Part shown: piece by piece, positions 11,001-48,601 of the stretch | Layout of the letters: every line of letters starts with the position of its first letter | Numbering within the stretch: the stretch's first letter is position 1 | Source of the DNA: Podarcis gaigeae | Lineage: Eukaryota | Length of the DNA: 64,000 bases | Direction: 5' to 3' (one strand) | Assembly (NCBI GenBank): GCA_964106915.2 | Contig: OZ066917.1 | Made by a program: the position numbers and the translations under genes | Notes under the pieces: model-generated | What the model was told of the DNA's origin: nothing | The model's input: only the letters and a program-made list of their open reading frames with translations | Database searches by the model: none

Positions 11001-12199
11001 GCTTCTTTCTGAAGGAATAGCTATTATTCATTCACTTCATACTGAGCAACTGATTAACAAAATATATTACCCCTGTTTTGAGAGAAATGAAGGTAATGTG
11101 CTCTCAGCAGTAGGCAGCAGCTGTACTGTAATAATAATAAACTTGAACATGGTGATATCATTGACTGCAAGTTATTTACAGATGTGATGAAATGAATTAT
11201 TGTAGAGAACTGAAACTTGACAAATCCTCTGCATTTCTGAATTAAACAAATGTGGGTATGAGATGTGAAATTCAAGGGAGAGGAAGGAAAGAAGGCAAGG
11301 TACAACTGGTGGTCCATAGTAAACCAGTGCTCTGACTTTCAAGCAAATGGATCTATATAATCAGTCTACACGTTAGAAAATTTATTAGCTTTATTGCATT
11401 TATGGAAGGTCACCACATATGCTGCCAGCTGAGTCATAAGATGTTTATCCACCATGAGTGGCCGTAGAAGCCAGTTAAATTGTCTGTCAAATTCCAAAGG
11501 ACTTGGAACACAATTTAATACAACATTAACGTCTGCAAATTTCAAGGTGTCCTAAACCATATTTATGTCACTGATGAGCTCTGAACAAAAGATTGTGACT
11601 TTAAAACAGGACCAAATCATTTGACAGAGCATAAATGACAGTGCTAGTGAGCCTTTTCTTAGGAAGACATCATGGAGACCAATAAGCTTCAGAGCCAAAG
11701 TGTATTGACTGCCTTTCAGTTCAGGCATCCTGGGCAGGTTCCATTTTCATTTACAGATTATGTGTGTCCTTACTGATGCAGAATAATAAATGAGTCAGCA
11801 CTGTATATCCTCACTGCTAAAAATACATTCAAAGTTACCCATCTGACCTCATTTCAGGTGGTGTTTTGGAGGAGGGGGAAAGTCAAGCCAAATCTGCTAA
11901 TCTGCTTCTATAACGCTACTAAGGAAAATGAAACTTGGTCAATGAAGAAAACAAATCAAATATATTGGCCAATCACGAAATGATGCCATGACAAGAATTC
12001 AAACAATAAGACTGGATAAAAACACCTAATGTACAAATAATCTCAGTAATTGCAGGACTAAACCATTCTTGGGTCATATGTGTGGAAGGAAGGCATTTGA
12101 ATAAACGGTTTCTGAAATCAATTTTTACACATAGGATGTGACGGTTCTCCTTAACGTTGGGTTGTATTTTTTAAATTTTTGCTTGGTAACCTTATGAGG

Positions 12200-13160
12200 G
12201 CGCTTAAGACTATGCAAAGAGACTCTTCCTCCGAATAACCTCTGCAGAAGCATCTCTCCGGTGATGCGTTTCCTCGTGTGAGAGAAAGCTAACAAAAAAA
12301 ACAAAAGCCTACCACCGCCATTGGGGCAATAGCTGTTTTTGTGAAGAGCAGCGAGGAGCTTTTGTGAAAAGCCGGCGAAGCGGGCATTATTTTTAGCTTG
12401 GCCGCCGGCCATCCCGAGGGAGCGCGTGCGAGCAGGGAGGCGCAGGCTGCGTCGCCACAGCAGGTGAACAAGCCGCTTCGGCCTTTCCTTCCAGCCAAGG
12501 GGAACTGGGGGCTAAGCCATGATGCTTTCAAAAAGCCGCCAGCCTGAGCGGCGAGAAAAGCAAGCGCCGACCTGCTTTTGTCCTTCGGTATAGCAGCAGC
12601 TCGGCACCGGCCCTAGTCTTTCCTCCTCCTCCCCGGGCGTCAGGCCGCGTGCGCAGCCAAAAGGCGCATCAAAATGGGGAGAGTTGGAGGAAAATCAGAG
12701 GGTGAGTAGAGAGGGTCGCCGCCGGGAGCCTCCCAGAATAAAAAAAGGCGGGAAGGGAGAAGGTGGCGGAGAAATGGGGAAACCGACAGAGCAATCCTCG
12801 GCTTGTTTACTGGGAAGGAAGGAAGGGGGCGTTTTCGGAGGGGCTTTGCTCCCGTGTAAATGGAGACGAGATTGCAGGCTCGGGATTCCGCGCTCTGCCT
12901 CGCTAGCTAATTCGCGTGTTGCTCTCAGACGCGGCAGGACTGGATGCGGTAGGAAAACCAGCCCAGCGAGAGGAAATAGCCCTTCCCCTCACTCGAAAGC
13001 TGCAGCTTCCCGCGAGGAGGGGGCGAAGCGGATCGGCGACTCCCCTGCGATCCTTGCCGAAGCATTGATGGCGCAGGGAGTTATGGGGTGGGAGCGGAGC
13101 GGAGGGTTTAATGCGGCAGCAATAGCGAACGAGAATGGTCACGGTGATTTCCTCTGCGTC
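12200..13160. promoter_or_regulatory. CpG island; probable promoter and first non-coding exon of the CAP-Gly gene
   Basis: Abrupt CpG/GC-rich, apparently non-repetitive block in an AT-rich background; NRF1-like GCGCGTGCG (12422) and GCGTGCGCA (12647); consensus donor AGG|GTGAGT at 12701/12702. Confidence 0.7.
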
Positions 13161-14559
13161 TAACAGCTTCATACCTGGTTGCATTGAGGGTATTAGTATT
13201 ATTATACAGTACTCCTATTCCAGGTTGTATTTGATGCAGTAATTATATTGTATTTTGTATTTGATGCAGTAATTATAATGAAAGCCTCTTCGGGTCCCCT
13301 AAACACATTATCCACAAGGTGGCTCCTTGCATTTTGTATCTCTCTTTAAAAAAAGAAAAAAAAGTTGTGCGAACATCCTAGCAAGTTAAAAACCGTGTAG
13401 CCAGCAGGATTGACAACACAGTATTCAAATGCACCTGCCAGCGTAATAACTTTGTGCTGCAAAGAAATGGTAGCTCTTAAATAAAGTGGGGTTGGGGGTG
13501 TATGTTTTTTTAGGGATGTTGAAATTTTGGTTTGGCTGCTGGGTTTCCCTCTTGTTGGGGTGGCACTTAGGGTGCTTAGAAGGATGTTTCTCTGCTATTG
13601 CTGAATGGTTCTGAGCCCAAATGAAGTAATTGGAGTGCTTGATGTTAAAGGAGAACATAAATACAGCAGGCATTGTGGAAACCTGGTAGAATGAAGGGTG
13701 AGATATGGTCATCTCTAGATAAAAATGCTATATAGCAGTGGCGACTTAACTTTTTTCGGCTTGAAAGCCGCATTCACTGTATGCCAGCCCTCTGAGGGCC
13801 ACATGGCACTGGTGGGCATGGCCAAAGCAAAAGTGGGTGTTGTTAAAGCAGGCATTGCCACCCCATCCACCCCCCCCATCTCACAAACAGCATATGCACT
13901 CACCACAGATACCACAGACAGAGAGATCTGAGGGGGGCATTCAAAAGGCTTTCTTCCCTGCCCAGTGTGCACTATCCCTTCTTGCAAGGGGGGGTATACT
14001 GGGTTAGAGAGGTGAGGGACTTTTATCCAGCGGTGGGGGGGGGGTGGCTGCAAGGATTGCCAGTAAACGGGGTCAAGGATGACCAACCATCGCAATGGCT
14101 TAGTGTGCCTGATCTGGGTTGCAGATTTGCTATGTCTGCTTTACAAGAAGGATAGGGGAGGGAGTGGTGTCACTCTATAGTTCAAGGATATGGTGTCAAG
14201 CAAATTGAGAGGAATCTCAGTTTTACTTTACCTTTACCCTGTTTTTCATGTAATTATCTCCTAAAACACCTCACATCAATTAAAAAACAGATAGGCGCAG
14301 TGCCATTACAAAGAAGCACAAGAGAAGTGAAAAGCAAAGGTAGAGGAGATATATCAGTTCTTTGAGGCCAAAACAAAGAGATGAGCAGGCATTTATATCC
14401 ATTGGGGCCAGGATGATCTTTCCTTGAAGGCATCATTGCTTGAGTTGGCAGCTCTTTTTTTCTTTTCTTTTTTGACCAGCTGATGGAGCCAGCACACCCT
14501 TTCCCCCATGCTTCTGCACAAACATGTAACTAAAATGATTAAGGGGCCGGATGGAGCAA

Positions 14560-24797: not shown

Positions 24798-24829
<32 letters not shown>

Positions 24830-24905
24830 TTTCGTAGATTTTCACGGGTACAGGAATGCAGGTTTTGGTGTCCTCGGGTGTCTTCCCGTGTAAAAGTTGG
24901 GGTGT

Positions 24906-25235: not shown

Positions 25236-25664
25236 ACACCCCAACTTTTACACGGGAAGACACCCGAGGACACCAAAACCTGCATATATATATATATATA
25301 TATATATATCAGCATGAGAAGGACATAAATATCCAATGGGAGATTAACAGATTAAAGGCACCCTCCTAAGACTAAAGAGGAAGAAAACTATTTTGAGAAG
25401 GAGTTTTACAATCTCTACAGCAGCACGTTAATGGAAGAGTGAAATATATTTCCCTTACATTTTTTCATATATTGTTTAATAATACACAAGCATAAAAATG
25501 CAATAGCAAGAAGCAGAGCAATAACCCCACTTTTGCAAGATGTGCAGTATGTCTGAAATACGTTTTGTATCTTTTAATATCTGTGGGTTTGTTTTGTTCA
25601 TTTTTACTCTTTCTTGTTAGGGTTCGCAAAGAGCCATCAGAGTTGATGGGATCTGACGGTTACA

Positions 25665-26343
25665 ATGGAGGCAACATCAAACGCAACCACAGAAAACTCT
25701 GATCTTGTGAAGGGAGCTCATCTAGAGACAGATGATTGGTTGGCTTCTCCGGGAACTATCAGCGATGCTGAAGATGAAGCTACTGCGAGGGAGAACATTC
25801 ACACTGACACTGAAAAAGAACCAGTAATGAAAGAGCCACTTGTGCTGATAACAGATTGGGATCCACGGGGTTTACCTAGCCAGGAGGAAGAATCATTGAG
25901 ACGCTCCCGGTATAGGTTAGGAGGCTCTGCTGATAGCATATTATCTTTAACTTCTTCCCATTCTCTCCTACCTCTTGAATGGAAAATTTTGAGATCTAGT
26001 CAATCAGAGAGCACACTGGCACATTTTTCTGATGCCACTCTGGAAAACACAGGAGGACGACATAAAGATTCATCAGACAATAACCAAGATGTTGTGGATG
26101 ATATAATTGGAGATGAAGTTGCTTTCAAAGTATGTACTCGTATGCTCAACCATAGTTTAGGTGCTGCTTACACTGCAGATTCCAGGACAGCCTTTCCCAT
26201 AATACACAATGGATCACCCAGCCCTAAAGATGCAAACTACTCAAAGAAAACTTCAGATAGCTCACAGTGCAAACATATACTGCACCCAAGAACAGAAAAG
26301 TTTCCAGATGTTGGAATGCAAGTTAATCAAGCACATAACTCAG
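25665..26343 (+). CDS. CAP-Gly gene coding exon 1 (acidic/Ser-rich; acceptor at 25620/25621)
   Basis: ttcttgttag| acceptor; 228-aa ORF MEATSNATTENS..QAHNS; donor CAG|gtaact. Confidence 0.7.
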
Positions 26344-29300
26344 GTAACTAGGACAATCATGGGTGTGTGGTGGTTGTGACCTGGCACGGTGGCTCCTTCA
26401 CACACATCCCATCCACCTAGCTGCCATGGTGCATTCTGGGGTCCCACCAGACCCAGATTTGAATTCTGAACCAATCTGCATTGGCTTGGGTGGGGGGACA
26501 GGGAGCAGACCTTGCTGCCATAGTCTCCACTCAGGTCTGCTCCCAGAACATTTAAGCAGGCCAGCTCATAACTTAGGTAACTAGGACAATTAACTAGGTT
26601 CTTTGAATGAATGAATGAATGAATGAATGAATGAATGATTCAGTCAGTCATGTAATGTTCTTCACATGTCCTTTTTCAGCAGCTGATAGAAAAGATTCAA
26701 GTTTGACTGACCAGCTTTGGACAGCTGCTGCATCAGCAAATAACTTACATAATATTGCCATGTCAAATGGTTGGGAAGGCAATTCTTATCATCACAAGGT
26801 ATTAAAAAATATATTTTCTTTAGTGTCATATGAATTCAAATGTTTCGTATGTTTCTGGACTTTATGCGTATTAACTCCTAAGCACGTAAGAGTCCTGTCA
26901 AATCATGCCAAATATCCATCATAGCATCCAGTTTTCATAATGGCGAACCAGATGCCCATGGGAAAGATGTCCCAAGAGCACTCTCCCCATGGGTGATTCC
27001 CAGCAACTGGTATTCAGAGTCAGATTGCTTCCAATTGTGGAGGAAGAAACATAGCCATCATGGCAAGTAGCCTTTGACAGCCTTATCACCCATTCATCTG
27101 TTCCCTTTTAAAGCAACTCACGTTGTTGGCCATCATTACCTCTCTTGTGGGAGTGAATTCGACAGTTTAACTATGTTATATTCCAACATTCACCTTCGTG
27201 GGATAAACTTGGAACATGAAGGTTTGGATATGGTGGTTCAGCTTCTTTACTAATCATTAGTATCCAAACTACCGTATATATACGTGGAAAGGGCTCGTCC
27301 TTGTAACCTTGGTAGTGCAAGACATTCATAATAAAAAAACCGACAGCGGCAATCGGGAAAGAAGGCATAAAGTTCCTGGCATATGAAATGAAAAAACAAA
27401 AAATATCTCCCTCCAAAAAAAAAAAAAACTCCAGAGAGGTGAAATTTAAAAAAATAGAATATACTTCCTTTTCTTAAGATGTGTGTTTGGGAGGATCGAT
27501 TGTGAACTAGTACTTTATTTGAAAATGATAGGTTTGCTTCTAGTTTGCCTGGCCCAAATACATCTCATATACCACAGTTCAATAAGCAATGTGTGAGGAT
27601 AGTATGTTTTGGTTAATGACAATTCAGCCTGTAATTAGCAGCCCCAGCTATTGCATGATATGGTTGATTTATACCCGCCTTCTAGGTATCTGCAGATAGT
27701 TCAAGTCTTTAAAAAGAAATCCATGGAAACCCATAAAATATGGCATAAAATGAGGAAAATATTTGTAAATGTTACTATGATTGTTTATATGTGATAGTTT
27801 TGATTACATGCAGACAGGAAGGGTCACAAAAGATTTTTTTGAAGTCTGAATGGTATATGTAAAACTTCCAAAAAGCAGCACTGGTGATGGTAGCGGGGAG
27901 AAGGAAGAAATTCCAGGTGTTTGAACATCTTTCTACAAGCTCCAGTTCTTCCTCCTTTTTTCCATTGTTTTCTTTGCATTGGACACGCTAAACTAGGCTG
28001 CTGCAGCAGCAGCTGCTCAAGCTGTGCCTCTTGACAATAGCCTTGCCTTCTGGCCTGATGATGGTTAGATTCTCAACACAAAAGCTCTTTTCTGATGTAA
28101 ATAGAGGGCAGTGACATTACACAAGGATTGTTGGGGATGCTGGATGTGGAATCATGAAAGCCGGCCAACCAGACAAAACTGCAAAGGTAAAATGGTAAAG
28201 TGCTGTTAAATTAAGGTTTTGGTTTTTTTTATAAAATATGAATAGAGCCGTCATCAAGCACTAAACAAAAGCTAATGCTTCATGGTAGCACCATATTTAA
28301 AATAACCCTTTCTCTGTGATAAAACATTTCAGTCAATGTCTGAAGCACAAAATATATGCTCATGCTTTTGTGAAGAATCCAAATCTTCCAAATCATGATT
28401 ATCTGCCACTACCGTCATTTTCTTTTTTAAGAAACTAAAGTATTTTTTGCTGGTTTCAACGATGCAAGATTTAGGAGCTCTTAGTATAATGCAGACTTCA
28501 TGGATTTTTGTCTGAATGTATATAACTGTTTGGTGTTTTCAAGATTTTGCATTTCTCTGCTCTTTTTCTCATTTTGAGCACACTTACATTGTAGCACTCT
28601 GAATTTTCCCCAATGATACTTTTATGTTGCATTTGTTTATTATGTTCACTAAGTTTTTACTGAACCCTACAACCACTGCAGTTTCTTTATCTTCAAAAGA
28701 TTAATATATATGGATATCAGCAAACTGAGGGGTATAAAGCAAGCTTTATATGGATATAAGTGAGAAGCGTATCCTTTGTTATGGTTTTAACAATCCACAA
28801 TCCACTTGTGTTTCATTTACAGTAACATGTCAAATCACAAACTTTTTCTCAGCAGTGAAGGTACCATCTAAGTTTAAATGTATATTCTTATTCAGTTTTG
28901 TGCTGTTTATACGATAAGAAGCTTTAACCATTCATATATTTGAGATATTCAATATTCATATTCAGATGGTAAAAAAAACATGTTTTTCTTTAAGGATTGT
29001 TGGAAATAACAAGGTTGAAGTTCTTAGTCTTTAGAGTGCCACAAGACAGGGCTAAACTTCTGAAGTTTGAATCTAGTATATGAACACCTGACTTGCTTCT
29101 TTGAACCATTTACGTTGCATAGATATGGCTTAGAGTTGTCATAATTTTATAATCTTTGTGGGGGTTTTGTATTGTGTTAACTATAAGCTGCTTAATGGAC
29201 CTGGACCACAGAGGACCTGAAAAGTATCCTATCAATTCAGTAGTAGTAAAAATAATAATGTACAAATGCAATCTTTGTATACTGTATAAATGCACAGGTT

Positions 29301-32300
29301 TGTTTGTTTTTTAAACAAAAGAGCTTTATTCTTAATACATGGAAAACAGCACACGTCACAATATACAGCACCATGCAACAGTTCTCATTACACAGCACAA
29401 ATTAAATTAAACACTTGAAATTTCTTCTTGACTCCCCCCCCCCTTTTTTTGTTAGTCAACAAAGAAAGGAAGGTCTCCTGCAATGTCAGAGTTTCTGCTG
29501 AAATCTCCAGATGAGAACAAACAGGAATTTCATCAACCCATGAAGAACGTGCAGGCTAAACGTCAAGTATTGTTGAATGGACAGAGTCCACACGCAGATG
29601 GCAAACTTTACGGGAAGGTGAATGATTTGCATCTATAGTTTCTTTCATTATAAGAACGTAAGAAGAGCCTGCTGGATCAGGCCAATGGCATCCTATTCTC
29701 AAAGCAGCCATCTGAATGCCTGTGGGAAAGCCCCAAACATGACTGGAGCACAAGCACCCTCTCCCATCCTGGGGCTTCCAGCAACTGGTATTCAAAAGCA
29801 TTACTGCCTCCTATGGTGGAGGCAAAGCATAGCCATCATGGCTTGTAGCCACTGATAGCCTTATCTGTCTAATCCCCTTTTAAAACTATCCAGCTTCATG
29901 GCCTATTGTTTATATGCACTGAGTGAAGAGGTACTGTCCTGAATCTTCACTGAATCCAGCTTCATTGAATCTCCATGAGTTCTAGCGTATAAGTGCGGGA
30001 GAAAGACCTCTCTCTATCCACTTTTTCCATGCCACGTGTAATTTTGTAAACATCTATCATGGCACCTCTTTCTCCCCTTTCAGGACCTTTTCCAACTTGG
30101 CAATATCCTTTTTGAGTACCAGAATATTCCAAATGTGGTCACACCACAGATCAGTAGACCAGCATTCTGATACCAGCAGTTTTATTTTCCATTCCTTTTC
30201 TACACACACCAGGTCAACATCTTCATCAACTGAAACACTTGCACTTTGCTGTTATCCTTAGTTCTGGCATACTGTGAAATTCGAAAACGAATAGAGAATG
30301 TTCTTAAATAGGCATATGACAGCTGCAGGAGTGAAGCTACAATTAACTCACCAGCAAAACTATCCAAAAGAAGTGGGGGCACGGGAAATAAAAACTGTGT
30401 AATTCCCCATTCCTTTGCTTCCTCCCTCCATAGTATACAGTGTACTTAAAGAACAACTGATTTAATAGATTAATGAAGCGGTTGTGTACTTGCGTGATTT
30501 GACTTCTGAACAGGGGAGTGGCAAGTCAAGTGAACTGAAATGCTTCCGAAATAGATAATCTTGATTGTACACTAAACAGATGGCAATGCCAGGAACTCAA
30601 GAGATAAAAATAGTCCAATGAGTGAGTTGCTGCAGACTCTTAGTCAGGGCTGTAAGCACAAGTTTATAGGAGCTTATCACACAGAAACTTTAAGAACAGA
30701 ACGGTAAAAAGAAAACATATAGAGGAGAGAAATCACTTTTTTGTATTAACACATATGCCACCGCATAGCCAGTAATGAAAAAAAGAAAAGAAATCAGAGC
30801 AACAAAAGTCAAAGCTATTTGGATAGCTTTTGTTTATTTTTGGTGTGGTATGCTATCTCTTAGATTCATTACTGGATAAAACCTGTGGTTTTTCCATACC
30901 CATCCAATACCCATACCCACACCAAAAATAAACAAAAGCTATCCAAATAAATACTTGAACTCTCAAAATATAACAATGACAATTTTTATAAGTATGGGAA
31001 TGCCAGTATGCAAAGTAAATTTGTGGAAAAAATAAAAGCTTAATAATATCAAACATAAGATACAAGATTTTCTTCCTAAATTACAAAGAAGGCTCAGTCA
31101 AAAGTGAACATAGAGAACTTATTTCATATTCATTGATAGGATGAGGAATACTATAAGCAAGAATGTAAAAAATGCATTGTACAGTATTCAAATATCTTGT
31201 TATTTCCTTTGTTCTTAGAGGTTGTCCCAATTTTGCTGCTGTTGCAAACTCCCAGATTTTATCAATCCAATCATTTATTGTTAGTGCCTCCACTTGTTTG
31301 CATCATTCATATATGTGTGTGTATCTCACACACACAGATGGATATAAGTATGTGTGACTTTATATAGATATATTGTAAGACATCAATTTAGAAAACTCAG
31401 AAGTAAGGGGAAAGCACATATTAAGAATTCAGAATTCACATATTCAGAATTACAAATAGAATGCCATATTTTTATCTTCTCCGTGTAATAAAACATGTGG
31501 TTTTTGAAACTGGAATGTTTCAAATGAACAAACTAATGCAATTTATTTTTTTTTAAGGAGATAGAATTTCTTAATGAAGAGCTGTCAACTTGTAGCCTGC
31601 CAAAATTTGAATGCAACTCTCCCGGAATTCTACAGCAACAGATTGGTATGAAGTCATGTAGGCTTGTTAATTTCATCATTCAACATTCAGTGCCTTTATT
31701 TTAATTTCCATTTGAATGTGTGCTAATTGGTTTTTATATGCATCAGTCCACATGATGATCCACATTTACTAATTTCTGTGAAAGTTCAAATAGCATTTTA
31801 GAAAAACCTTGAAACCATGTTCTATTCCTTCTAAGTATTATAGGATGAGTGTTCAGGTTATCGGCACCACTACAATCCCACAACTATTGGTTAACACTGG
31901 CTACAAACAGCCAACACTATGGCAATAAATTTAAGCATCAGCTTAATGCATTATTTCCCCTTTCCCCGCTAAAATCTCTAAATGCACTCAAGTAAACAAA
32001 CTTTCCACCCCAAACCATTTCAAGCTGTACAATTTCCCCCAAAAACTTTACTCAAAGTCAAAGTCATAGAATTGCAGAGTTGGAGGGGACACTGAGGGTC
32101 ATCTGGTTCGACCCCTGCAGTGCATGAGTCTTTTGTGCAAAGTGCGTATCCTATGCCTCTACTAGGCACCATTCAATCAAGGCTGTATTTTTATGCACAC
32201 TTTTAATTCATTCTGAGAAACAAGTGTAGTCCTGGGAGGCAAGCTAAGTATTTTGAAGTCCCTTTTATTTCAGTAGGAGAGTTGCAATCCTATGCACTAC

Positions 32301-34197
32301 TGAGAAATAAGCTCAGTGAGACTTACTCCCCAGGTAAGTGTATCTTGCATTAAAGTCTTAAGCACAATAGGCCTTAAATGTGACTAGACGATGCATACTG
32401 AATATTTTTGCATATTGATACACAGTAAACCTTAAAAGCCAGATCACCGATCTTCAAGAAGCCAATGAGACTGCGGTCTTAGAGCTAGCAAAAGCAGATG
32501 AGGAGATTTCACAACTGAAGAATGAAATGGCTCAATTAAAATCTGACTATATGCAGAAGTTAGCAGACTCTAAAGAAGAAAATCTTAATCTGAAGAAAAT
32601 GGTAAGAGGTCTGAGACAATCCTTTATTATAATATACTTTAATTTTAAACCTGTGTTTTTCTTTAAGTGGGGTAGAAGACAGGTAATATATATTTAATCA
32701 TGTATCAAACAGTAACCAAAGCTATAATTAGTCAACGGGTGATATTCATTTGTTTTATGCCTACAACTGTGAGCTTAAACATTCTTAGTATGTATTTGTC
32801 TCCTAAATGTTTTATAAAATAATTGCATATTTTACACATTCACTGCTAAACAATGCTGTAAAGAATGATAAACTCACTGCATGCAGAAAAAGTACCACAG
32901 AAGAGAAAGAGTTCTGGCCTTTTTACTTGCATGTTTGGTTTGTTTGTTTATTAAATTCGTTGTTCACTTACTTTGCCACGGCAACTCTAAGCGACGTGCA
33001 ATATTTTATGTGACTTAGAATTTATTTTTACATGGGAAATTCAAACATAAGAACCTGTCCTGCAGTCTGCATTGGCACAGGACCAGGTAGGGTGCATTCT
33101 GCAATTTCTCTGCACATGAATATAATCCATTAGGCAAAACTTTAAGCAACCTGGGAATTACAGCAGTTCAGAAGTGATCAGTTATGCTTTAAACAATTGA
33201 TTTCTTATATGTTGATTTCTACTCTTTATTGCTTTCCTCCTTCATGATCAAGAATCAAAACACAGTTTAAACTAATTCTTCCCCCTCTAAAGATCAATAG
33301 GATGCACAGCAGACATGATCCAGTAGACACTTATGAGCAGACCTTGCATGAAGAGATTTGTGAGCTAAGAGCTGAGTCCAGGAGACTGAGGGAAATCGGC
33401 CACCAGCTGAATGAGGAAAACCACAGGATGAAAGAAGAGCTATGGGATGTAAAGAGGAAATATGAATGGCTCGTGCATACAGTTCCTGGCAAACAGGATG
33501 GTAAAGGAACCACCATTATGGTATATTGCTTGGGTTCTTACGATGATCAGTAAACAGCCCAGTATGTTGCTCCAGCAAAGATAGGAGGCCACATCTTATT
33601 AACAACATTAACACCAGTTACTTTTGAGCAATGACTTTATAGCAGAGCTTCATGGCAGTAGCATAGCATGGGCAGGCACAGGGGCAGTTGTCCCAGGTGC
33701 ATAATTGTTAGGGGCACAAAATTTCAGCACCTCAATACAGCTGCCTCAATTCACAGTTCCATCACTGGGCTCTGGTGAAAATGGCTCCTCTGTGCAAACT
33801 AGGAAGTGACCTCTGCAGACAATGGAACAACTCTTCTTGTCTCTGCAGCTATGATCTTCTGGGCGATGCAGATACCATTAGGCAGTTGAATGTGCATGCA
33901 TACTCTGTCCGTTTCCCTCACTCCCACCCCCTCTCTGTGTGGCCCTGGGCGCTGGCAACTCATGCTACACCACTGCTCATTAGCCCATTCTTCTGCATGG
34001 GTTCATCATGTGTCCACTGCAATGTAACTAATACAGGAGGAAGACTGACTATAACAGGCCCCTATCCATCACTATTGTGCACTGGCTGATGTATAAAAAA
34101 TAGTTGCTACTCGCCATGCAATCAGATAGACCTGGTCCTGGGGTTTCTTAAAAGGATAAAGTGCATTTAACAGGTTTTCAATAATAATAATAATAAT

Positions 34198-34229
<32 letters not shown>

Positions 34230-35829
34230 CTGAAGATATAGTGACAATGAACTTGATTTCAACCACCAACTTCAGTATGAATCCTATCATGGAGAGAAAG
34301 GTCTGAGATATACATCACCTCATCATTCTGGGTTGCCTCTGTGTTTGTGCCCAAAATGACTGTTTTCATTTTAAAAGATCTTGTCTCTAGTCATTAGTTA
34401 CATCTTTATACCCTCAACAATTATCCCAAGTATTTTATAAATTATCCAAGGCAAAGCTATAACATTAACACCAATACTACCACAGTGAAATTCACCAAAA
34501 CAAATCTTTATTGGAATTCGAAATGCCAGAAGAGGTATTTGTTTATTAACTGTAAAGGTGATTAACCCTCAACAGGTAATTAATACTGTCAGAGTTGATG
34601 GTTAGCAAAAAGAGATCAAGCACTACAGAAAAGGGAATTCAACTTTCTACTGCGGTCACAGCAATACTGAATCATGGCAAATAGCTATAAAATAGCTTTC
34701 TTAAAACTAAAAGTGCTTGAAGATCAGTGCAACTAGCAGCAGTTTGTATATTTATTTTACATTAAGTTCTTCCAATGAGTATCTAATGTTACTCATTTGA
34801 TTACATTTTATTTTAAATGTGGCATCTGTGATAAGTAGGACAATTCTGTTCCCAGCTATACTAAAGCCAAAGTGTATTTCTCACATCTTAATTTAAAATA
34901 CTAATAATAAAGCAGGAAGTTGCTCTTTCAGAAGACATTCAACCAACAAACGGAAAAGACATTTCACTTTTTGAAAATACATCATTTTAATAATTAAAGC
35001 ATCAGTGCTTAATAAAAAATAGTTTAGTTTTAATAGACTGCATCAACAGTGATTTAAAAAGATTGACTGAGTGAAATATTATTGCTTTATAATATATAAA
35101 ACATCTAAGCAGAATTTGATAATAAGCAAGGCTTTTATTTTTATCTAGAAAAGATACAAGAACATTCTAGGAAAAATGCTTCTTCCCCATCCTCCATAAA
35201 TAGTGAATCTACAGAATTTCTGATTTCTGGATACTGTGACACAGGGCTAGCAAAAGAAAACAGAGACTTAAAAGGTATGGTAATTAAAATATGCAATTGC
35301 ACATCTTCTCATTTTGCCTTGTTAGCACAGAAAAGAATAAAAAAGTATACTCCATGTTCCCATGAATCTTCATATGGAAAGAAAAATCACTTAATTGGTT
35401 TTCTGTTTTCAGCTTTCTTTTTATGCAGTCAGTGAAAAGTAAGATCTATTTGGCTGCTTAGAGTTGTGAAATACTTCCTCCAAACATTCCTTGCTTTGGA
35501 TATTATTCATTATTCTTTATGGCCTTTCCACACAAAACATGCCAGATTTCAGTGGACCCAAAATATAGGAAAAATTCTGAGCTTGGGTGTTATCGCTTTT
35601 AGTAATGCATCTGCATGCTTTGCTGGATTGGGATAAATTAAGAACCTCAAAAGTGTAGACTCCCTGCATTCGTCCAATATGGGGGAAAGGAACATTGGTC
35701 AACATACTGTTTTCAGTACTGGCAAAACAGCCACAAAATGTGATGGCTATGTAAGGATTTTACATTATCATAAAGGCATTCAGACAGACAACTGAAGAAA
35801 AGACTAACCTTGGAGCTGGGAGTCCAATT

Positions 35830-35890
<61 letters not shown>

Positions 35891-38800
35891 TATATACTGC
35901 CATATACCTGCAGGAATATAAAACCATAAAGTACATAATCAAAATAAAAAAACAACCCAGTAACACACACACACCATATTTGTAAAAGGGCATAGGATGT
36001 CAATCAAATGAACCAAAGGCCTGGTTAAAGAGGAATGTTTTTGCCTGGCGCCTAAAGTTGTATAATGAAGGCACCAGGCAAACTTCGCTGGGGAGAGCAT
36101 TTCACTGATGGGAAGCCACTGCAGAGAAGGCACGTTCTTGTGTTGCCACCCTCTGGACCTGTTGTGGAGGAGGCACGAAGAAGGGCCTCAGAAGATTATC
36201 TCAGGGTTATCTTATCTGACCATTCTTATCTTATCTATTCTTATCTAACCAATAGATTTAACTATTATTTTCATCCTTGGAGTTGTCACAATATATCTGT
36301 AGTGGTATATCTTATTATTTGAACAAATGTGCTTTTGGCAACTCCATATCATTTTTCCAAGAGCACAGAAATAACCAGGAAAGTCAAACCTTTAGCCCCG
36401 GGAGTTTATCAGGGCCTTCAAGAATCCCCAATACGTCCAGTGACATCTCCAGGGCTATGAAGCAGACTAGCCAATGACTGAGGCCACATCAGTGTCTCTT
36501 CCTTTGTCCCCTTTCAAATTAGCGATATGGGTTCAAGAAGTGTGGCAAGTAAAGAGACGTTTGATCAAACTGAGTGCACTGGAGCAGGCTATGCAAATTA
36601 CAGTGTTCTAGCATTTTTTGTAAAAAACAACAACCAAACAAACCATGGATTGATGCACTTTAATGGTTTCCAAGATAAATATCTAGAATTTTACAACTTA
36701 AGTATCTGAGGTGAGATAAGGTTTTTTAGTTTTTTGCACACAAAATTATAGAATATTCCCTGAGCATATGTTGGTAGGGAACTGGTTCCACATTACCTAT
36801 TTGAGTTGGGCATCCTTGAACAAAACCTTGCAACTAGATTTGACCCAAATTTTTGAGCAGCTTTTTAATGTTTTTTTAATCATATTTCGTAAACCTTTTA
36901 TTGGCATCACATACAACATCCAAAACAAATCAATGCAGAATTACCACTTCCCCAGTGGCACAAACATTTGCTAAAAGAAAGGAGGCAGAGCAGTCTATCG
37001 TCACATCTCTTGGTCTCCAGGGAGATCAGACGTCTGCAGTGTAATTTTTTTTTTTTTAATCAAGATGATGCATCTGAAGAAGTAACAGAGGCGAGCAGCA
37101 GCAACTTTCCTTGCATTACTCAACACAATCAAACAAGTCATGAGAACTATGATCAAAACATCTCAAGTTCATCTTCGAGTGGTGTCTCTCAAGTGGACAC
37201 TTGCAATAAATATTATCCAAACAGGTAAGAATTGAATGGACATGAATATGATTGTGTTGTAAATGTAGTTTTCTGCTGTAGAGAAAAAGGTTGAGACCCC
37301 ACAATGTGTAGTACTGCCAACTTAATGAATGCAAAGAGGTCAAGTAACTCTTCAGCAACAGTCTAGCTAAAGCAGGAAAGCACAGAAACATGTCTGCTGG
37401 GCTTGAGCTCATCACAAAATCAAGGACTATCTTTCCCCTTTGCTCTGATTATGTATAGATGTCAGCCAGCACATTAGATGAGATCAGTCATGATATGTGC
37501 GCTCCAAGATGCGACAGCTAGGATTGTTTCAATTTATGGCTATAATGCTAGGCTCACTTCAGAAAGATAGGGCTGTGAGAACTATGTGGAACTGAATGAG
37601 TGGCAGGTGTTGGATTGACAACTGTGGGCACACTGATTGCTCCAGCAAAACCACTGAATAGAAGGGGAAGCAGTAGCATAGGGAGTCCCTTAATGCTAAG
37701 TAAGCCAAAACCAAGATAGGCACTAAAACATACCTAAATCTCAATCCAAGCCTACTGCATGATGGTTTTAACATTACAAATGACAGGAAAAGATCACCAC
37801 CAAAAATTCTCTTTAGCACAGGGGAGGGGGACCCCTAACCCTTCTGGACTCTCCCTAGGTCACACACCTCACCAGCCCTACTCCACGCCCTCTGAGTAAT
37901 TCTGCTGGAGTAGAATGTGCCCTTGAGTTGTTCTAATGCCCCTTGCTTGCCTGCTTGGTGCAATAGAGAGGGGCCTGTGCATGCAGAAGCCTTTGGCTTT
38001 GTGTGTTTGGAATGTGTCACATTTTATAAAGCATTGTTTCCATTGCTGCACCCACTTTTTTCTTTGGACCTAACACCATGTGAATGCTGGCTTTGAAAAG
38101 TTGGCCATGAGGGAATATGGCCCTTTATTTCTGCAATTTCCACATGAAAAATACAAAGCTACGTACAGTAAAAAACTATTTCATTTCTATCCCTCTCTTC
38201 ATTAAACCTGGTGATCCTATGGCAATACCGTAGAATAAAAGCATTTAAAAACAATGACCAATATTCTATTTCTTGTCCAATATTCTGTCTGACCAGGACC
38301 CTTCCATGACCCACATACAGCGGGTAGCATTTTAGATCTGTGCCTCCTCCTTTGCCTTTCTTATTTGTCCTGCAGTGTTGTTAAAAAGACCTTCTATAAT
38401 GCTATTAAAGAGAGGCATGGACAAACCTAAATCCAAATCTTCCACAAATACTGCAGTGATTCCCTAATCCTTTACAAGGATAATAATGAATTCCTTGCTT
38501 TCCTAGAGACAAATGAAGCAGCTTGTCCTCAGTCTCTTTCATTTATCATTACCGTTTAAAACACAGAGTAAGTTTTGCCAAGAAAGGAGTTTGATTTTGT
38601 TAAAATGTGTACAGCAGCTACCACTGGTTGAAGGTGAAAGAACCTGCTGCATAAAAGATTTTTCTTGCAACTTCCCTGTAACATCAGAGCTGTGGCTTAC
38701 ATCAGAATAGCAGGGCTGTGTCTTGTTTCTTCTGCAGTCCAAATAGCAGCCAGCTGTCCCCTAATTTTGTGCATGAAAATTCCCACATGTTGTTAGAATA

Positions 38801-41800
38801 AAGAATTTGAATAGATGTTATTGTTACCCCACACACACACACACAAAAATCACGGCTCTTTTACTTAAGTTGCAATGAGAATGCAGTGTTAGAGTGCATA
38901 TAAGTTCAAGGAAAACAACTGTTTTTATCAGGTACCTGTAAGGGCCAAAGTAGACATGATGTGAGAGATCTGTGGTCACATCTCAGGTATTTTTATACAC
39001 TTTAAAGCAGCAATGTGGGTCCACAAATTGTACAAGAACCACAGCACTATGGGAGAGGAGTGTAACCATTTTCTTGCATGTCATTTCACAGATATAAATA
39101 CCATCCAGTGAAGCTGTGAAGAAGAGGAGAGAAAAATATGGGCACCCATATTGTACCCATCTTTCTCCCCGTGGGCATTTCTCCTATTTAAATATTTACA
39201 GAACTGTGATTATCCCCAGAATGGGAAGAAGATGGGAACAATATAGGTGTCAATCCTTGCCCTTCCTACAAATTAACATTAGCTTGGGGGTAGGGGGGCC
39301 TGACTGAAGGAAATGGAATTGTGAGGGTAAACACTCAGCAACATGGCCCAATCCAATTTTGTTTCTGCAAAAGGTTGTTGGGAAATTCAGTCCCAATTCC
39401 CCCTGTCATGTCTAGTTTGTTCATAAGATATGTAGGATTCTTTGGTTATCACGAAGAGTCTGAATAATAAAATTGTGCTGGAGTACCAAAAAAAAAAAAA
39501 AAAGGACTCTTACGTCTTTCAAAGGATAGCTATTGATTTTCTACAACTTTTTATCCCAGGATTCGTCTAGATAAGGCGGCACTATCAAGACGACCATTTG
39601 CACCCAGGAATGTTACAGACTTGAAAGTTGGAAACCTAGTGAAATTTTCATGCCCAGCAGGAAAAATCAGCAAGGGAACTGTTAAGTATTTGGGACCACT
39701 TTTGGGGAGAGAAGAGGACTACCTTGGAATAGAGCTGGAAGGGGATCAAATAGGAAGGCATGATGGAACTTTTCAAGGAACACGCTACTTTCTTTGGTAA
39801 AGTTTACTCTTCTACCTGGCAATAGTATACTTGAGATCTTCCCTTCCCACCCCGAACCCAATTTTCCCCAGGGGTAGAAATAAAGCAATTTCAGTTTTCT
39901 TGTTCAACATTTTACCTTTACCATGCATAATATGCAACCACTAATGGATCACAAATGTGTGTTGGCAAGTTTGGTTTTGAAGTATTGCACAAAATACAAC
40001 ATTACAAAAGCTATACTACTCAATTGAATATATTATTGGTGAGGACAGGGTTCATGGCATGTTCCTTAGAATTAGTATAGTAACTAACAATAGCAGTAAG
40101 TTCACTTTTTATTGATGACAGCTTCAGGATTTAGCTACTGTCTGCAGCAAATTGTGTTAAGCATTGCTATCAGTGTAAACGCAAGTACCTTGCATCCTCC
40201 CACCTGTAAAAACTGGTGTGCAAGAGATGGAAAAAGCAAAGTATGTGGGAAATCCTGTGTCACCATCTCATCAAGACTAGAATTTCACATTTTTTTTTGC
40301 ACTTTATCAAACAGTAACCATGCCTTGTACTCCTAATTTGGAGTGATGGCAAATTAATGTGCTGTTATCAAACATTTAAAAAGTATTATTCTCACAGAGA
40401 TTTGTAAATGCACCATTTGCAACTTAAAACATGTGTAAATGCTTTACACCATCAACTACAAGGTATTAAATGTTTCCCTCCCATAATTGTGGGAGTTTTG
40501 GAATTCCCTCCCTACAGAGGTGTCTGGCACCTTCATTTTGCATTATTACATATTTCTAGAACCCACTCTCGTTGTGATTGTAATTCGTTTTAAACTGTTT
40601 GTATCTCATCCTGTGTCTGTCTGGTGAAGTGGGTAATAAATCTAAGAAAAAGTTTTACTGGTGCTATTAAGCATTGCAATGGATGTAGGAGAAAAATCCT
40701 GAAAATGTGATGTTTTCCTGGCACTCTATATATGCCTGTTTCTGCCCACTTTCTGCCTCCAATCAATTATTTTATATCTATGTATTATAAATGTCTGAGA
40801 ACTTCCTTTATATAATGGACATTATGAAAATTCTAAAGAACAAATTGCTTTGTGCATCACTAGAGAGAAAAGCTTGCACTCAGAAATTCTATAGTTCAAA
40901 GTAGCTCTATAAACACGAGGTGTGTGCATGAGCCCAAGATTCACCTTATATTTGTGCATATATATATAATATATGAAGACAGAAGTGCCTGGCGCGCTCT
41001 GGTCCATGGGGTCACGAAGAGCTGTGCTTTGGGTTCAGAGGCACTTTGTATAAAACAAATTCATTCTCATGGTGAATCTAAAAATTACTTTTCCTTCTTT
41101 TTGGCAGAAGTTGCTGAAATTTGCAAGTGCATGAACCCACTAGTTTTTCTTCAGACTGCATAAATCTTTGCAGAACTCCTCCAGACTAGATTAAGCCTGC
41201 CAGAGGCTTCTGTGGGGGATGTAAAAGGAACTCACATTCTCCATAATCAGTATTAGGGCAATGCATTTGCTAGGCCAACTAAAACTCCAAAATCCATATT
41301 AGTTTAATATTTTCAAGTTCAGGGAAGCATGGTGGCTTGTGCCTTGCTTTTTCATAACTTAAAATAATTAAGAAGTAGCTGAGTTGTGTGTATTCTTGCT
41401 TGTGCATTTTTCAAAACATTAGCTTCACATGAGCTGGCTTTGCTTTCCTGGAGTCTCTCCCAGAGTTTGTGGAGACAAAACTAGTACGTAAAAAACGAGT
41501 GCTTTTAAATTGCTGGAATGTTGCTAAGCTACAAGTCTCAGCATCCCTGCTGAGCTGTAGTCCAGCACCTAGAGGGCACCATATTGGCCATCTCTAGCAA
41601 TTTGTATCTCCATTCCAAGTCTGAACCATGCTGTGCTCTTCAAAATTTTAATACTAGCTTTACTGCCTGAGCAATGGCTGTAACTTCAGTGCAGGGAGCG
41701 TTTATTTATCCCCTCAAATAACCCTGATATCTACTTTCAGCAATGCCTTATCATTTCTTGACCCTTTCCTCAATTTATTTTATTCCTGTCTCTACCAGTG

Positions 41801-42283
41801 CTACAGTATACATCTCCACTATTGTATCTCCCAGAGTATACGTGATAAAGTGGTGAAATAGAAACTATCCTCAACAGCAAAGATATTCCACCCTATGGGC
41901 GGGGGGGGGGGGGGGGAGAGAGAGAGAGAGAGAGACTAAAGTCACAATTAAAAGATAGTGCTGGTCCTGGTAAAGGGTTTCCCACTAACAGAAAATTGTG
42001 CATTTTCCCCCTGTCATGCAAAAATGTCCTTGTTGTCTTTAAATTGTGGCCTTTAAGAATCCAAACAGAAAACACTGTCCAGCAGCAGATTTCTGTTTGC
42101 ATGACCATCAAAGTAACTTGAGTAAATTGAGTTTGTAACTCTTGTTGGTTAGTTAACTTTGTGTCATAAAAAGTCACGTCAAAGAACCATATCCACATTA
42201 CTGACTTTCAAAATTTGTTTTCCAGTGCCCCTAAAAAAGGAGTTTTTGTTAACTTCAGCAAAATCATTATTGCCTGGGAATAA
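25665..42283 (+). CDS. Uncharacterised coiled-coil protein with C-terminal CAP-Gly domain (10 coding exons, about 670 aa)
   Basis: join(25665-26343,26680-26798,29456-29617,31558-31645,32426-32601,33293-33500,35149-35274,37065-37224,39560-39796,42226-42283); all GT-AG, phases 1,0,0,1,0,1,1,2,2; 2013 nt open reading frame; ACAATGG Kozak context; AATAAA at 42454. Confidence 0.75.
26680..26798 (+). CDS. CAP-Gly gene coding exon 2
   Basis: ctttttcag|CA GCT GAT AGA..CAC AAG|gtatta; phase 1-0; NAGNAG acceptor. Confidence 0.65.
26880..27180 (-). mobile_element. CR1 3'UTR fragment
   Basis: TTCCCAGCAACTGGTATTCAGAG..ATAGCCATCATGGCAAGTAGCC..CCCTTTTAAAGC. Confidence 0.7.
29456..29617 (+). CDS. CAP-Gly gene coding exon 3
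   Basis: tttttgttag|STKKGRSPAMSEFLLKSPDENKQ..KLYGK|gtgaat; 162 nt; phase 0-0. Confidence 0.65.
29650..30200 (-). mobile_element. CR1 3' fragment
   Basis: CATTATAAGAACGTAAGAAGAGCCTGCTGGATCAGGCC (CR1 tail, reverse) through AGAATATTCCAAATGTGGTC (PHLEY motif, reverse). Confidence 0.8.
30850..31295 (-). mobile_element. L1/Tx1-like LINE 3' remnant
   Basis: Minus-strand ALTINDWIDKIWEFATAAKL resembles non-mammalian L1 ORF2 C-termini. Confidence 0.5.
31558..31645 (+). CDS. CAP-Gly gene coding exon 4
   Basis: ttttttaag|EIEFLNEELSTCSLPKFECNSPGILQQQI G|gtatga; phase 0-1. Confidence 0.75.
32066..32160 (-). mobile_element. Second, degenerate CR1-tailed tRNA SINE
   Basis: CATAGAATTGCAGAGTTGGAGGGGACACTGAGGGTCATCTGGTTCGACCCCTGC. 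Confidence 0.55.
32426..32601 (+). CDS. CAP-Gly gene coding exon 5 (coiled coil)
   Basis: acacag|NLKSQITDLQEANETAVLELAKADEEISQLKNEMAQLKSDYMQKLADSKEENLNLKKM|gtaaga; heptad pattern. Confidence 0.85.
33293..33500 (+). CDS. CAP-Gly gene coding exon 6 (coiled coil)
   Basis: ctctaaag|INRMHSRH..LHEEICELRAESRRLREIGHQLNEENHRMKEELWDVKRKYE..QD G|gtaaag. Confidence 0.85.
34180..34228. repeat. (AAT)n(CAT)n compound microsatellite
   Basis: Read directly from the sequence. Confidence 0.9.
35149..35274 (+). CDS. CAP-Gly gene coding exon 7
   Basis: ttttatctag|..KIQEHSRKNASSPSS..NRDLK G|gtatgg; 126 nt; phase 1-1. Confidence 0.7.
35825..36210 (-). mobile_element. L2 LINE 3' end with (TTA)n tail
   Basis: (TTA)n followed by AAAGGCCTGGTTAAAGAGGAATGTTTTTGCCTGGCGCCTAAA..GCAGAGAAGGC..GGGCCTC. 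Confidence 0.75.
37065..37224 (+). CDS. CAP-Gly gene coding exon 8
   Basis: (t)n aatcaag|..DASEEVTEASSS..KYYPN AG|gtaaga; phase 1-2. Confidence 0.75.
39560..39796 (+). CDS. CAP-Gly gene coding exon 9 (CAP-Gly domain)
   Basis: IRLDKAALSRRPFAPRNVTDLKVGNLVKFSCPAGKISKGTVKYLGPLLGREEDYLGIELEGDQIGRHDGTFQGTRYFLC: CAP-Gly signature G-x-V-x-Y-x-G..G-I-E-L..GRHDG..G-x-RYF-x-C. Confidence 0.9.
42226..42283 (+). CDS. CAP-Gly gene terminal exon
   Basis: ttgttttccag|T GCC CCT AAA AAA GGA GTT TTT GTT..TGG GAA TAA gives (C)APKKGVFVNFSKIIIAWE*, completing the CAP-Gly G-x-F-V motif. Confidence 0.88.
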
Positions 42284-42453: not shown

Positions 42454-42459
42454 AATAAA
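42454..42459 (+). terminator. Poly(A) signal of the CAP-Gly gene
   Basis: AATAAA about 170 nt after the stop, preceded by a U-rich TGTA-containing tract. Confidence 0.6.
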
Positions 42460-46600: not shown

Positions 46601-48452
46601 TCCTCACCAATGGCAGCACCTAATAGTGCCAAATGGGAGCTTATGTTCAAAGAAGGCAAGAGGATCAATATGAAATCATGGCAAGTGTTACAAACACATG
46701 ATGCAATTTAACTGAAAAACCCAATGCTTCTTATCTCTTTGTTTTTCCATTTCCTAAAAACAAAACAATTCCATAACTGAATTCTTAATTAGAGCAGCAG
46801 AATTCTTAAAATTTCATCAGGACGTTCAGCAGTCATATTTTAAGTGTCAAAATCATGACTTTAGAAAAGAAATCTCAACACTGGTTCCTTTCATTTCACT
46901 GTGTTCCTTTGCTGTTTGATATAAATCAATAAGATTTTACATACCAGATAAATTCCACTTTGCATGGACAACCTCTACATCTTATTACATGGGCAAGATG
47001 TGAAACTTGCTTGCACAAGGTGCAAGTATTTGGAGTAATATAATTGAAGAGTGCAAGAAATTACACACATTGTTCCAGTGCTTTATCAGTGAGGAAAAAA
47101 CAGTCTGACTGTTCTTGAACAGTTTTATTATAGAAAGACTCAACTTCAAAACCAAGAAACCTTCACAAAAGACTGCTTTATTTCAGCAACCTAGCACTCA
47201 AACAAATCAAACATCCTCTTGATAATAATCAGATGCATAAAAGTACCAGTACAATTCCACTCTGTTTTGTTTTGTTTATGCCTATTAACTGCCCATTTTT
47301 TTTTATTAAAAAAATGCATTTAAAGATCTGCTGCTCTTACTAATTAATACAGACTGGTTTATTGACAGTGTGCAAATAAACCTTTATTGAAGAGCTAATA
47401 TTGATTACTGTTTTTCAGCTAAATCAGAATGGGGGCACAAAGTACCTTCTGTGCTGTAAACATAATGAATTCTTCACATAATTGGAAGCTGAAAAGGCCT
47501 AAGGAAAAGGGTGCAAACACTTCTCATACATAACAATGGCTGAGCTCAAGTCTTCCAAAAAGAATTTGGAATAGTTCTGCATTTGGCATACGTCCACTCT
47601 ACTGTCATCAAGCACAGTTTAAGGGAACGTCGTTTATAAAAGCATAATTTACTTTTAGCTTTAAAACACAATGGCCTAATAAAAGCATGCAGCACTATTT
47701 TTTTCCTCTGTAATATGATATAATTACTTAATTACCAGTGTTAACATGACTTGGTGAGTGCTGTACAAGCAAAAGGGATTGTAAAATCACCTCTGATTGT
47801 ACTCTATAAATAAGGCTCATACAGTACGTCTCCCTCCTCACCATGATCCACAATTTCAAAACAGCATTTGTGTAGAATTAAATTACCCTGAAAAAAGCAG
47901 CATTTACAAATATCCTCATTTTTTACTTTTTTTGCCCCCCCCACCTCCCCCCCCCAAAAAAGAAAAACACCTTCCTTCTTTTTCAGTAGTTTACAATCTG
48001 GAAACATAGGGAGTCTTTGTTTTCCAAACGGCTGTGGCCAGATTATCAGATCTGGTTCTTCACAGTTTGTCTGGATACCTGTAACACTTCACACCACAAA
48101 GTAATAGTTCTATGCTTATAAAAATATATATATATATATATGTAAGGGCTACTACCCAGCAAATGTAATTATAGGGGCTAGAACAGCAGCAATCATCTGA
48201 TTCCTTATACATTCTTCACAGAGGGAATCCATTTTGGGTATCCTTTCAGTCTTGCTCAACGCAGTGGGATAAGAGTATTTTCCCCAAACTAATATTTAGT
48301 GCAGCATGAATGGAAGGGGGATCTCTCCCTTATAATTTGAAATAATTGGCTGGCAAACGCCTGGCAGATGACTGAAAGGTGTCTCATATATTCGTCTCCT
48401 ATGGCTGTGTCCTCAAGAGCCTGTTTTTAATCCAAAGCAGACCTTTATGGAT

Positions 48453-48601
48453 TCAGGCATACCGCGGCATTTCACATTGCTCACAGCGATTCATTGCTGG
48501 GTGGTTTAAAAAAGTACAGCTCTTACAATTCCATGGAGCTCCTTCAAAGTCTTCGTCTCTTGGCTGTGATCGTGGAGCTTGTTTGGAACTTCTCTGATGA
48601 T
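48453..48601 (-). CDS. TAB3: TAB3 terminal coding exon (NZF zinc finger)
   Basis: ctgtag|[49 protein letters not shown]. Confidence 0.95.

What the first reader, a model, noticed from the sequence alone, without database searches (positions are those of the whole stretch)
25665..42283. Unnamed coiled-coil plus CAP-Gly gene hidden between GK and TAB3
Seen: ten GT-AG exons splice in phase into a 2013-nt ORF (about 670 aa). It has a disordered acidic/Ser-rich N-terminus, a coiled coil of about 150 aa (exons 4-6), a Ser-rich linker and one CAP-Gly domain ending exactly at the C-terminus (..GVFVNFSKIIIAWE*). The ORF track misses the domain entirely because it is split over two exons with no ATG. 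Known: CAP-Gly domains bind tubulin/EB C-terminal EEY/F tails. I recall no protein-coding gene between GK and TAB3 on human Xp21, and this architecture does not match CLIP1-4, DCTN1, TBCB/TBCE, CYLD, KIF13B or CEP350. Inference: an uncharacterised dimeric microtubule- or centrosome-associated protein retained in reptiles and possibly lost in mammals. Exons 1-3 are less certain than exons 4-10.
Basis: partly seen in the sequence, partly recalled or inferred. Interest (0 to 1): 0.85.

Follow-up and report, generated by a model that had tools for sequence, protein, structure and literature searches.

The report
Unnamed ancient CAP-Gly gene in lizard
This is a real, intact lizard gene of an old, unstudied animal protein family not found in mammals or birds; its CAP-Gly domain, usually a tubulin-tail reader, has a rebuilt binding pocket and probably binds something else.

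Summary
Confirmed. Ten GT-AG exons give a stop-free 670-aa ORF in a lacertid lizard. It is the ortholog of RefSeq 'uncharacterized' LOC114596189 (Podarcis muralis): annotated, but unnamed, with no paper found. All ten intron phases match Lacerta and Anolis; dN/dS is 0.43 (0.22-0.28 in coiled coil and CAP-Gly against Anolis). The family is far older than reptiles: sharks, chimaera, coelacanth, gar, sturgeons, amphibians, turtles, lamprey, amphioxus, spiralians and, by the domain only, corals and some insects. GK lies upstream in chimaera, TAB3 downstream in Xenopus. No mammal or bird protein was found. A short paralog, probably teleost, also turned up. F52 is Gly in 88/101 and W57 Tyr in 85/101 family domains, none canonical, and the family has its own conserved motifs. 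Best reading (0.5): a coiled-coil dimer adaptor whose non-canonical CAP-Gly binds a different partner, as CYLD's do. Tyrosination-independent microtubule binding is the main rival (0.3). No earlier scan note on this gene family.

The parts
12001..13500 (.). CpG island between the GK 3' end and the gene; likely promoter (inferred, not tested)
   Evidence: CpG o/e 0.80-0.88 against mostly 0.0-0.4 around it
25665..26343 (+). Coding exon 1 (acceptor AG ends 25620, ATG 25665); disordered, with short vertebrate-conserved motifs
26680..26798 (+). Exon 2 (disordered)
28154..28186 (+). Possible alternative first coding exon (ATG, 11 codons, phase-0 donor that fits exon 3) for a short isoform of about 415 aa
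   Evidence: block 27989-28198 conserved in Anolis; A. carolinensis isoform matches 28052-28192; use in this species is inferred
29456..29617 (+). Exon 3, symmetric cassette (absent from P0202 and P0207)
31558..31645 (+). Exon 4, start of the coiled coil
32426..32601 (+). Exon 5, coiled-coil helix 1; 176 nt from chimaera to lizards
33293..33500 (+). Exon 6, coiled-coil helix 2
35149..35274 (+). Exon 7, linker with a conserved Ser/Pro/acidic motif; symmetric cassette (absent from P0210)
37065..37224 (+). Exon 8, Ser-rich linker
39560..39796 (+). Exon 9: RPFAP extension plus CAP-Gly core (L599, G622, Y627, E633, R639-H640-D641); 237 nt, phase 2-2, also in chimaera and lamprey; skipped in one P. 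raffonei isoform
42226..42283 (+). Exon 10: last CAP-Gly strands, near-invariant Trp at the penultimate position, stop; 58 nt in all five vertebrate orthologs mapped and in the short paralog
42454..42459 (+). Candidate polyadenylation signal AATAAA
3022..3108 (+). Neighbour: GK penultimate coding exon
   Evidence: 76% DNA match to the chimaera gene with FGGY domains
48447..48560 (-). Neighbour: TAB3 last coding exon (zinc finger); large TAB3 exon at 57484-58956

Best explanation
Shown: an intact gene under purifying selection, ortholog of a jawed-vertebrate gene in the GK-TAB3 interval and member of an unnamed animal family built as disordered N-terminus, about 130-aa coiled coil, disordered linker and one terminal CAP-Gly. 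Inferred: the coiled coil makes a parallel dimer that holds two CAP-Gly heads on flexible linkers, so the protein works as an adaptor. The head is a non-canonical CAP-Gly. Its EEY/F pocket is remodelled (F52 to G, W57 to Y, R90 to N/A/S/P) and new conserved features are added (RPFAP extension, KFSR-x-x-GKIS hairpin, LPGR loop, terminal F-x-K-x-x-x-x-W). It most likely binds an internal peptide motif or surface of a conserved partner, as the non-canonical CAP-Gly domains of CYLD do, rather than tyrosinated tubulin or EB tails. The partner was probably not essential in the lineages that lack the gene.
For: ORF and splice sites. Same intron phases in Lacerta, Anolis and, for the conserved exons, Xenopus, chimaera and lamprey. 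dN/dS 0.43 overall, 0.22 in the coiled coil and 0.28 in the CAP-Gly against Anolis. Synteny. A vertebrate-only profile scores family members 77-181 bits and other CAP-Gly domains at most 43; no protein over 300 aa scores between 50 and 70. Pocket census of 101 non-redundant family domains: F52 site G 88, F 0; W57 site Y 85, W 0; R90 site N/A/S/P 87; 104 control domains keep F 67 and W 54. Residue map from the p150Glued alignment and PMC3583065. Helices and heptads. CYLD CAP-Gly domains bind atypical internal peptides and NEMO (PMC13376213). CYLD CAP-Gly3 ranks first in Foldseek and in hhalign (107 against 72 for a CLIP-like domain).
Against: No binding or localisation data, and no partner identified. 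His at the N69 site is also common in control domains (61/104), so that change alone means little; W to Y is conservative; F79 and F88 sites are kept. The domain has many conserved Lys/Arg, and CYLD CAP-Gly1/2 still associate with microtubules. The CYLD likeness is not robust: p150Glued ranks first by profile HMM, TBCB and CLIP-170 first by structural Z, and the tree placement is unsupported (89/10). Dimerisation is inferred from heptads only.
Confidence: 0.5

Rival explanations
1. Microtubule-associated protein that binds the lattice or acidic tubulin tails through its conserved basic surface, independent of the terminal Tyr/Phe; the dimer gives avidity and could bundle or anchor microtubules, for example in sperm or ciliated cells.
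For: Eleven profile positions are over 70% Lys/Arg; median net charge +4. Coiled coil plus CAP-Gly is the usual microtubule-linker layout. CYLD CAP-Gly1/2 lack the canonical residues yet facilitate microtubule binding.
Against: Core net charge is +2 against +7 in CLIP-like domains, with a conserved acidic loop. No separate basic patch next to the domain. No tissue data. Absence from mammals and birds argues against a core ciliary role.
Confidence: 0.3
2. Canonical EEY/F reader: a plus-end or centrosome protein that binds tyrosinated alpha-tubulin, EB or CLIP-170 tails.
For: PF01302 above cut-off; fold matches p150Glued and CLIP-170 at Z about 12; G-[KR]-H-D-G resembles GKNDG; F88 and F79 sites invariant or nearly so.
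Against: F52 and W57 sites are canonical in none of 101 family domains, and N69 in 1; in dynactin1 these residues are almost invariant (PMC3583065).
Confidence: 0.1
3. Ubiquitin-binding adaptor using a CYLD CAP-Gly3-like site (coiled coil plus ubiquitin-binding head, as in NF-kB adaptors).
For: The site equal to CYLD Leu475, where most CAP-Gly domains have Arg or Pro (PMC8511506), is L/V/I/F in 79/101 family domains (L599 here); the Glu507 site is E/D in 87/101. Alignment bridged through.
Against: The Val487 site is mostly Thr. The C-terminal helix that carries Phe545 is absent, since the protein ends there. KIF13B has a hydrophobic residue at the Leu475 site and does not bind ubiquitin; the authors found binding only in CYLD. 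Lying beside TAB3 is no evidence.
Confidence: 0.09
4. Pseudogene, chance splice model, or merely 3' exons of GK.
For: Some databases file isoforms under GK or as GK fusions (P0216, P0241, P0244). No junction reads were obtained for this species.
Against: No lesions; dN/dS 95% interval 0.34-0.54 against Anolis; conserved intron phases; own ATG behind an in-frame stop and a CpG island; a spliced 669-aa ORF on one 2.9-kb contig from a frog-like run; lamprey has the gene without GK upstream.
Confidence: 0.01

Closest known systems
RefSeq uncharacterized orthologs: LOC114596189 (Podarcis muralis), LOC117045380 (Lacerta agilis), LOC132771751 (Anolis sagrei), LOC108708387 (Xenopus laevis), LOC103186410 (Callorhinchus milii)
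   Same: Same gene: exon-by-exon similarity, intron phases, GK/TAB3 neighbours.
   Different: No difference in kind. They are automatic predictions without a name; six of these family identifiers gave no paper. Labels such as CEP350-like, CLIP2, myosin-11-like, golgin-like and GK isoform are automatic.
CLIP-170/CLIP-115 and p150Glued (canonical CAP-Gly proteins)
   Same: CAP-Gly fold (Z about 12, rmsd 1.5-1.9 A) joined to a coiled coil.
   Different: Their CAP-Gly domains are N-terminal (own knowledge) and keep F52/W57/GKNDG; here one C-terminal domain, about 33% identical, with G/Y/GRHDG and family-specific extensions.
CYLD CAP-Gly1 and CAP-Gly3 (non-canonical)
   Same: No F52/W57, similar Pro/Gly loop and G-x-ELE strand, hydrophobic residue at the Leu475 site; top Foldseek and hhalign match.
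   Different: No USP domain; one CAP-Gly instead of three; no Phe545 helix; kinship not supported by the tree.
CEP350
   Same: Single CAP-Gly with coiled coils and Ser-rich disorder; source of some automatic names.
   Different: Its CAP-Gly is the weakest PDB sequence match (E 0.0025); from memory it is internal in a protein of about 3,100 aa at another locus.
KIF13B and TBCB
   Same: Single C-terminal CAP-Gly; TBCB domains give the top structural Z (12.6, tied with others).
   Different: No kinesin motor or ubiquitin-like domain here.

Membership tests
CAP-Gly domain (PF01302) | HMM score above the Pfam gathering cut-off | tested here: met
   44.3 bits for exon 9 alone, 61.2 for the Anolis ortholog, cut-off 26.5
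CAP-Gly domain (PF01302) | CAP-Gly beta fold | tested here: met
   Anolis model pLDDT 88.6; Foldseek prob 1.0; Z up to 12.6 against 8 or less for non-CAP-Gly rows
Canonical EEY/F-binding CAP-Gly (p150Glued, CLIP-170) | F52 and W57 aromatic pocket | tested here: not met
   G622 and Y627 here; G 88/101 and Y 85/101 in the family, F or W in none
Canonical EEY/F-binding CAP-Gly (p150Glued, CLIP-170) | K68-N69 of GKNDG, and R90 | tested here: not met
   R639-H640 and N661; K/R kept at 68 (86/101), H at 69 (92/101; also common in controls), N/A/S/P at 90
Canonical EEY/F-binding CAP-Gly (p150Glued, CLIP-170) | Binding to tyrosinated tubulin or EB tails; plus-end tracking | not testable with these tools
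   needs binding and imaging experiments
CYLD family | USP/UCH catalytic domain and three CAP-Gly domains | tested here: not met
   one CAP-Gly only and no UCH in ten family members; UCH detected in control P0134
CYLD CAP-Gly3-type ubiquitin-binding site | Leu475, Val487, Glu507 and the Phe545 helix | tested here: inconclusive
   L599 and E633 match; T613 does not; helix absent
CEP350 or CLIP1-4 orthologs | Orthologous sequence and architecture | tested here: not met
   family scores 77-181 bits against at most 43 for other CAP-Gly domains; CEP350 domain weakest PDB hit; no ankyrin or second CAP-Gly
GK isoform or fusion | FGGY domains in frame with these exons | tested here: not met
   own ATG behind an in-frame stop; GK coding exon 22 kb upstream; chimaera GK is a separate gene; read-through RNA not tested
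Jawed-vertebrate long form of the unnamed family | Conserved coiled-coil blocks, linker motif, terminal CAP-Gly, GK-TAB3 position | tested here: met
   (one side of a branch, 96/87)

The most novel reading that the evidence does not exclude
An unrecognised animal CAP-Gly family, dating at least to the bilaterian ancestor and perhaps to the cnidarian split, with a conserved binding surface of its own that reads a new ligand (a non-EEY/F motif, a detyrosinated or otherwise modified tubulin tail, or ubiquitin). It serves a process that mammals and birds dropped or replaced.
Probability: 0.3. Interest if true: 0.72.

Novelty: new variant of a known kind. Interest (0 to 1): 0.5.

Why it matters
The CAP-Gly repertoire is usually drawn from human, fly, worm and yeast. 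This family has kept 64% mean column identity from molluscs to lizards while replacing the EEY/F pocket, which points to a strongly selected but unknown ligand. It can be tested in Xenopus and with a 97-aa domain. It is also a clear candidate for a gene lost from the interval that became mammalian Xp21. The limits: the gene model is already in public annotation, and nothing about function is shown.

Tried and rejected
Later domain work used Anolis, turtle and amphioxus records. The spliced model was joined only in local scripts, for the frame check and composition; the joined search step was left out. No contig taken for human was met. Five paper searches for the family, its identifiers or the locus gave nothing relevant. 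Pfam and Atlas hits for the coiled coil are generic: all below cut-off or under 0.9. The idea that the linker motif folds onto the domain found no support (pLDDT about 50). 'Lost in teleosts' was narrowed to the long form after a short paralog turned up. A CYLD-derived origin was considered and left open. Absence in snakes, geckos, crocodilians and salamanders is not claimed: a short cluster representative hid the Lerista protein from the length-filtered search, so single lineages can be missed.
Full report
OBSERVATION. The ten exons named in the observation check are all GT-AG, total 2013 nt and translate to 670 aa without a stop. An in-frame stop lies just upstream of the ATG and AATAAA 170 nt after the stop. 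Exon 9 scores PF01302 at 44.3 bits. GK's penultimate exon is at 3022-3108 and TAB3 lies on the minus strand from 48447. A CpG island at 12.0-13.5 kb is the likely promoter (inference). The genome is a lacertid lizard: exon 1 is 94-96% identical to Podarcis and Lacerta proteins.

IT IS A REAL GENE, ALREADY PREDICTED ELSEWHERE. Searching exon 9 against 1.8 billion representatives gave a tight group of single-CAP-Gly proteins at 67-81% identity. They are 'uncharacterized LOC' models from lizards, turtles, frogs, caecilians, coelacanth, bowfin, gar, sturgeons, bichirs, sharks, rays and chimaera. The P. muralis protein (671 aa) hits all ten window exons in order. Exact spliced mapping shows the same ten exons and phases in Lacerta and Anolis. 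The 58-nt last exon recurs in Xenopus, chimaera and lamprey, the 176-nt exon in Xenopus and chimaera, and the 237-nt exon in chimaera and lamprey. dN/dS is 0.43 against both Lacerta (95% 0.26-0.77) and Anolis (0.34-0.54); against Anolis it is 0.22 in exons 4-6 and 0.28 in exons 9-10. GK lies upstream in chimaera, and a CUE-domain gene of 680-692 aa (TAB3) lies downstream on the opposite strand in Xenopus, Lacerta and Anolis. Sturgeon and bichir gene callers fused it to GK, which also shows adjacency. Lamprey has other neighbours. A frog-like sequencing-run contig holds the whole spliced ORF.

WHAT I COULD NOT DO. The model was searched exon by exon; the joined search was left out.

FAMILY RANGE. 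Homologs with the same terminal domain occur in lamprey, tunicate, amphioxus, crinoid, molluscs, brachiopod, nemerteans, an annelid and rotifers, most also matching the vertebrate coiled-coil blocks. Montipora corals, two wasps and a beetle match by the domain only. A profile built from vertebrates alone scores these 77-128 bits, while CLIP-like, ankyrin and CYLD-type domains score at most 43. Three homolog searches, one with a turtle query, returned no mammal, bird, crocodilian, snake, gecko, salamander or teleost long form. For mammals and birds, with many annotated genomes, that is good evidence at the protein level. For the smaller groups it is weak, because a short cluster representative can hide a lineage (Lerista). 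That no human gene lies in the interval rests on my own knowledge and was not looked up. A second, short subgroup (about 290-320 aa: hydrophobic N-terminus, short coiled coil, same type of domain, same 58-nt last exon) forms its own branch (98/96). One member comes from assembly GCA_019703515.2, from memory a teleost. Its Atlas neighbours are chordate clusters, one named LOC103187315, by its number probably chimaera, which would make it an old paralog. No GK or TAB3 match lies within 10 kb of that member.

ANATOMY. AlphaFold on a 75-sequence alignment gives disorder over 1-285, long helices at 336-408 and 413-466, a disordered linker and a confident domain from about 575 (Anolis numbering). 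Heptad a/d positions are 12/19 and 9/14 aliphatic against 7/47 and 2/37 elsewhere. Exons 3, 7 and 9 are symmetric and each is missing from some ortholog isoform; skipping exon 9 removes the CAP-Gly core. Many ortholog models of 400-500 aa start just before the coiled-coil region, and a conserved ATG-bearing exon at 28154-28186 could supply such a form here.

THE DOMAIN IS NOT CANONICAL. The fold is CAP-Gly (Z up to 12.6). PMC3583065 names F52, W57, K68, N69 and R90 as the p150Glued residues that bind EEY/F tails and calls them almost invariant. The gapless alignment to p150Glued maps them to G622, Y627, R639, H640 and N661. In 101 non-redundant family domains the F52 site is Gly in 88 and Phe in none, and the W57 site is Tyr in 85 and Trp in none; control domains keep Phe (67/104) and Trp (54/104). 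His at 69 is common in controls too, so it is not diagnostic. The family also has conserved features of its own: an RPFAP extension, a basic hairpin, an LPGR loop and a Trp at the penultimate position in 94/101. Among known domains CYLD CAP-Gly3 is first by Foldseek and hhalign, but p150Glued is first by profile HMM, the structural Z-scores are close, Atlas rows are tied and the tree is unresolved. The likeness is a lead only. CYLD domains bind atypical internal peptides, NEMO, ubiquitin and microtubules (PMC13376213; PMC8511506). The ubiquitin site is half matched: the Leu475 and Glu507 sites are, the Val487 site and the Phe545 helix are not.

HOW IT MOST LIKELY WORKS. Shown: intact gene, purifying selection, architecture, altered pocket. 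Inferred: a coiled-coil dimer with two tethered heads that bind a conserved non-EEY/F partner (0.5). Rivals: tyrosination-independent microtubule binding through the basic surface (0.3), canonical EEY/F reading (0.1), ubiquitin binding (0.09), artefact or pseudogene (0.01). The first two are not exclusive.

NOVELTY. The gene model is public and CAP-Gly is a known module. I found no paper on the family, its range, its remodelled pocket or its absence from mammals and birds (the library lacks most subscription journals). Verdict: new variant of a known kind, interest 0.5.

Noticed in passing
window 24856-25285: Perfect 210-nt-arm inverted repeat with a 10-nt loop, flanked by (TA)n on both sides, about 335 nt before the first coding acceptor. 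It falls in a gap of the Lacerta agilis alignment (24814-25308), so it is probably a recent insertion. Rfam found no hammerhead at the gathering score.
   Followed up: partly
proteins P0079, P0097, P0102, P0109, P0123, P0130, P0140, P0141; locus L007:10001-22395: Short paralog subgroup with a hydrophobic N-terminal segment, short coiled coil and the same non-canonical CAP-Gly; probably teleost-rich, also uncharacterised.
   Followed up: partly
window 27989-28198: Intronic block conserved with Anolis (76%), holding a likely alternative first exon (ATG 28154, donor after 28186).
   Followed up: partly
window 23974-24310: Non-coding, AT-rich block conserved with Anolis (71%) upstream of exon 1; possible enhancer or untranslated exon.
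   Followed up: no
window 33500-33653 and 44426-48628: Conservation with Anolis runs about 150 nt into the intron after exon 6; the region behind the TAB3 stop (probably its 3' UTR) is conserved over about 4.2 kb (70%).
   Followed up: no
proteins P0216, P0241, P0244, P0221: Annotation oddities: a P. raffonei isoform filed as 'glycerol kinase' is this gene without exon 9; sturgeon and bichir models fuse GK to it; the Tiliqua model lacks the domain.
   Followed up: partly
proteins P0003, P0007, P0023, P0131: Unnamed proteins with 7-16 tandem CAP-Gly domains; no other Pfam family in the three scanned; origin not determined.
   Followed up: no
literature (PMC13376213): [quoted passage not shown] Probably coincidence.
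   Followed up: no
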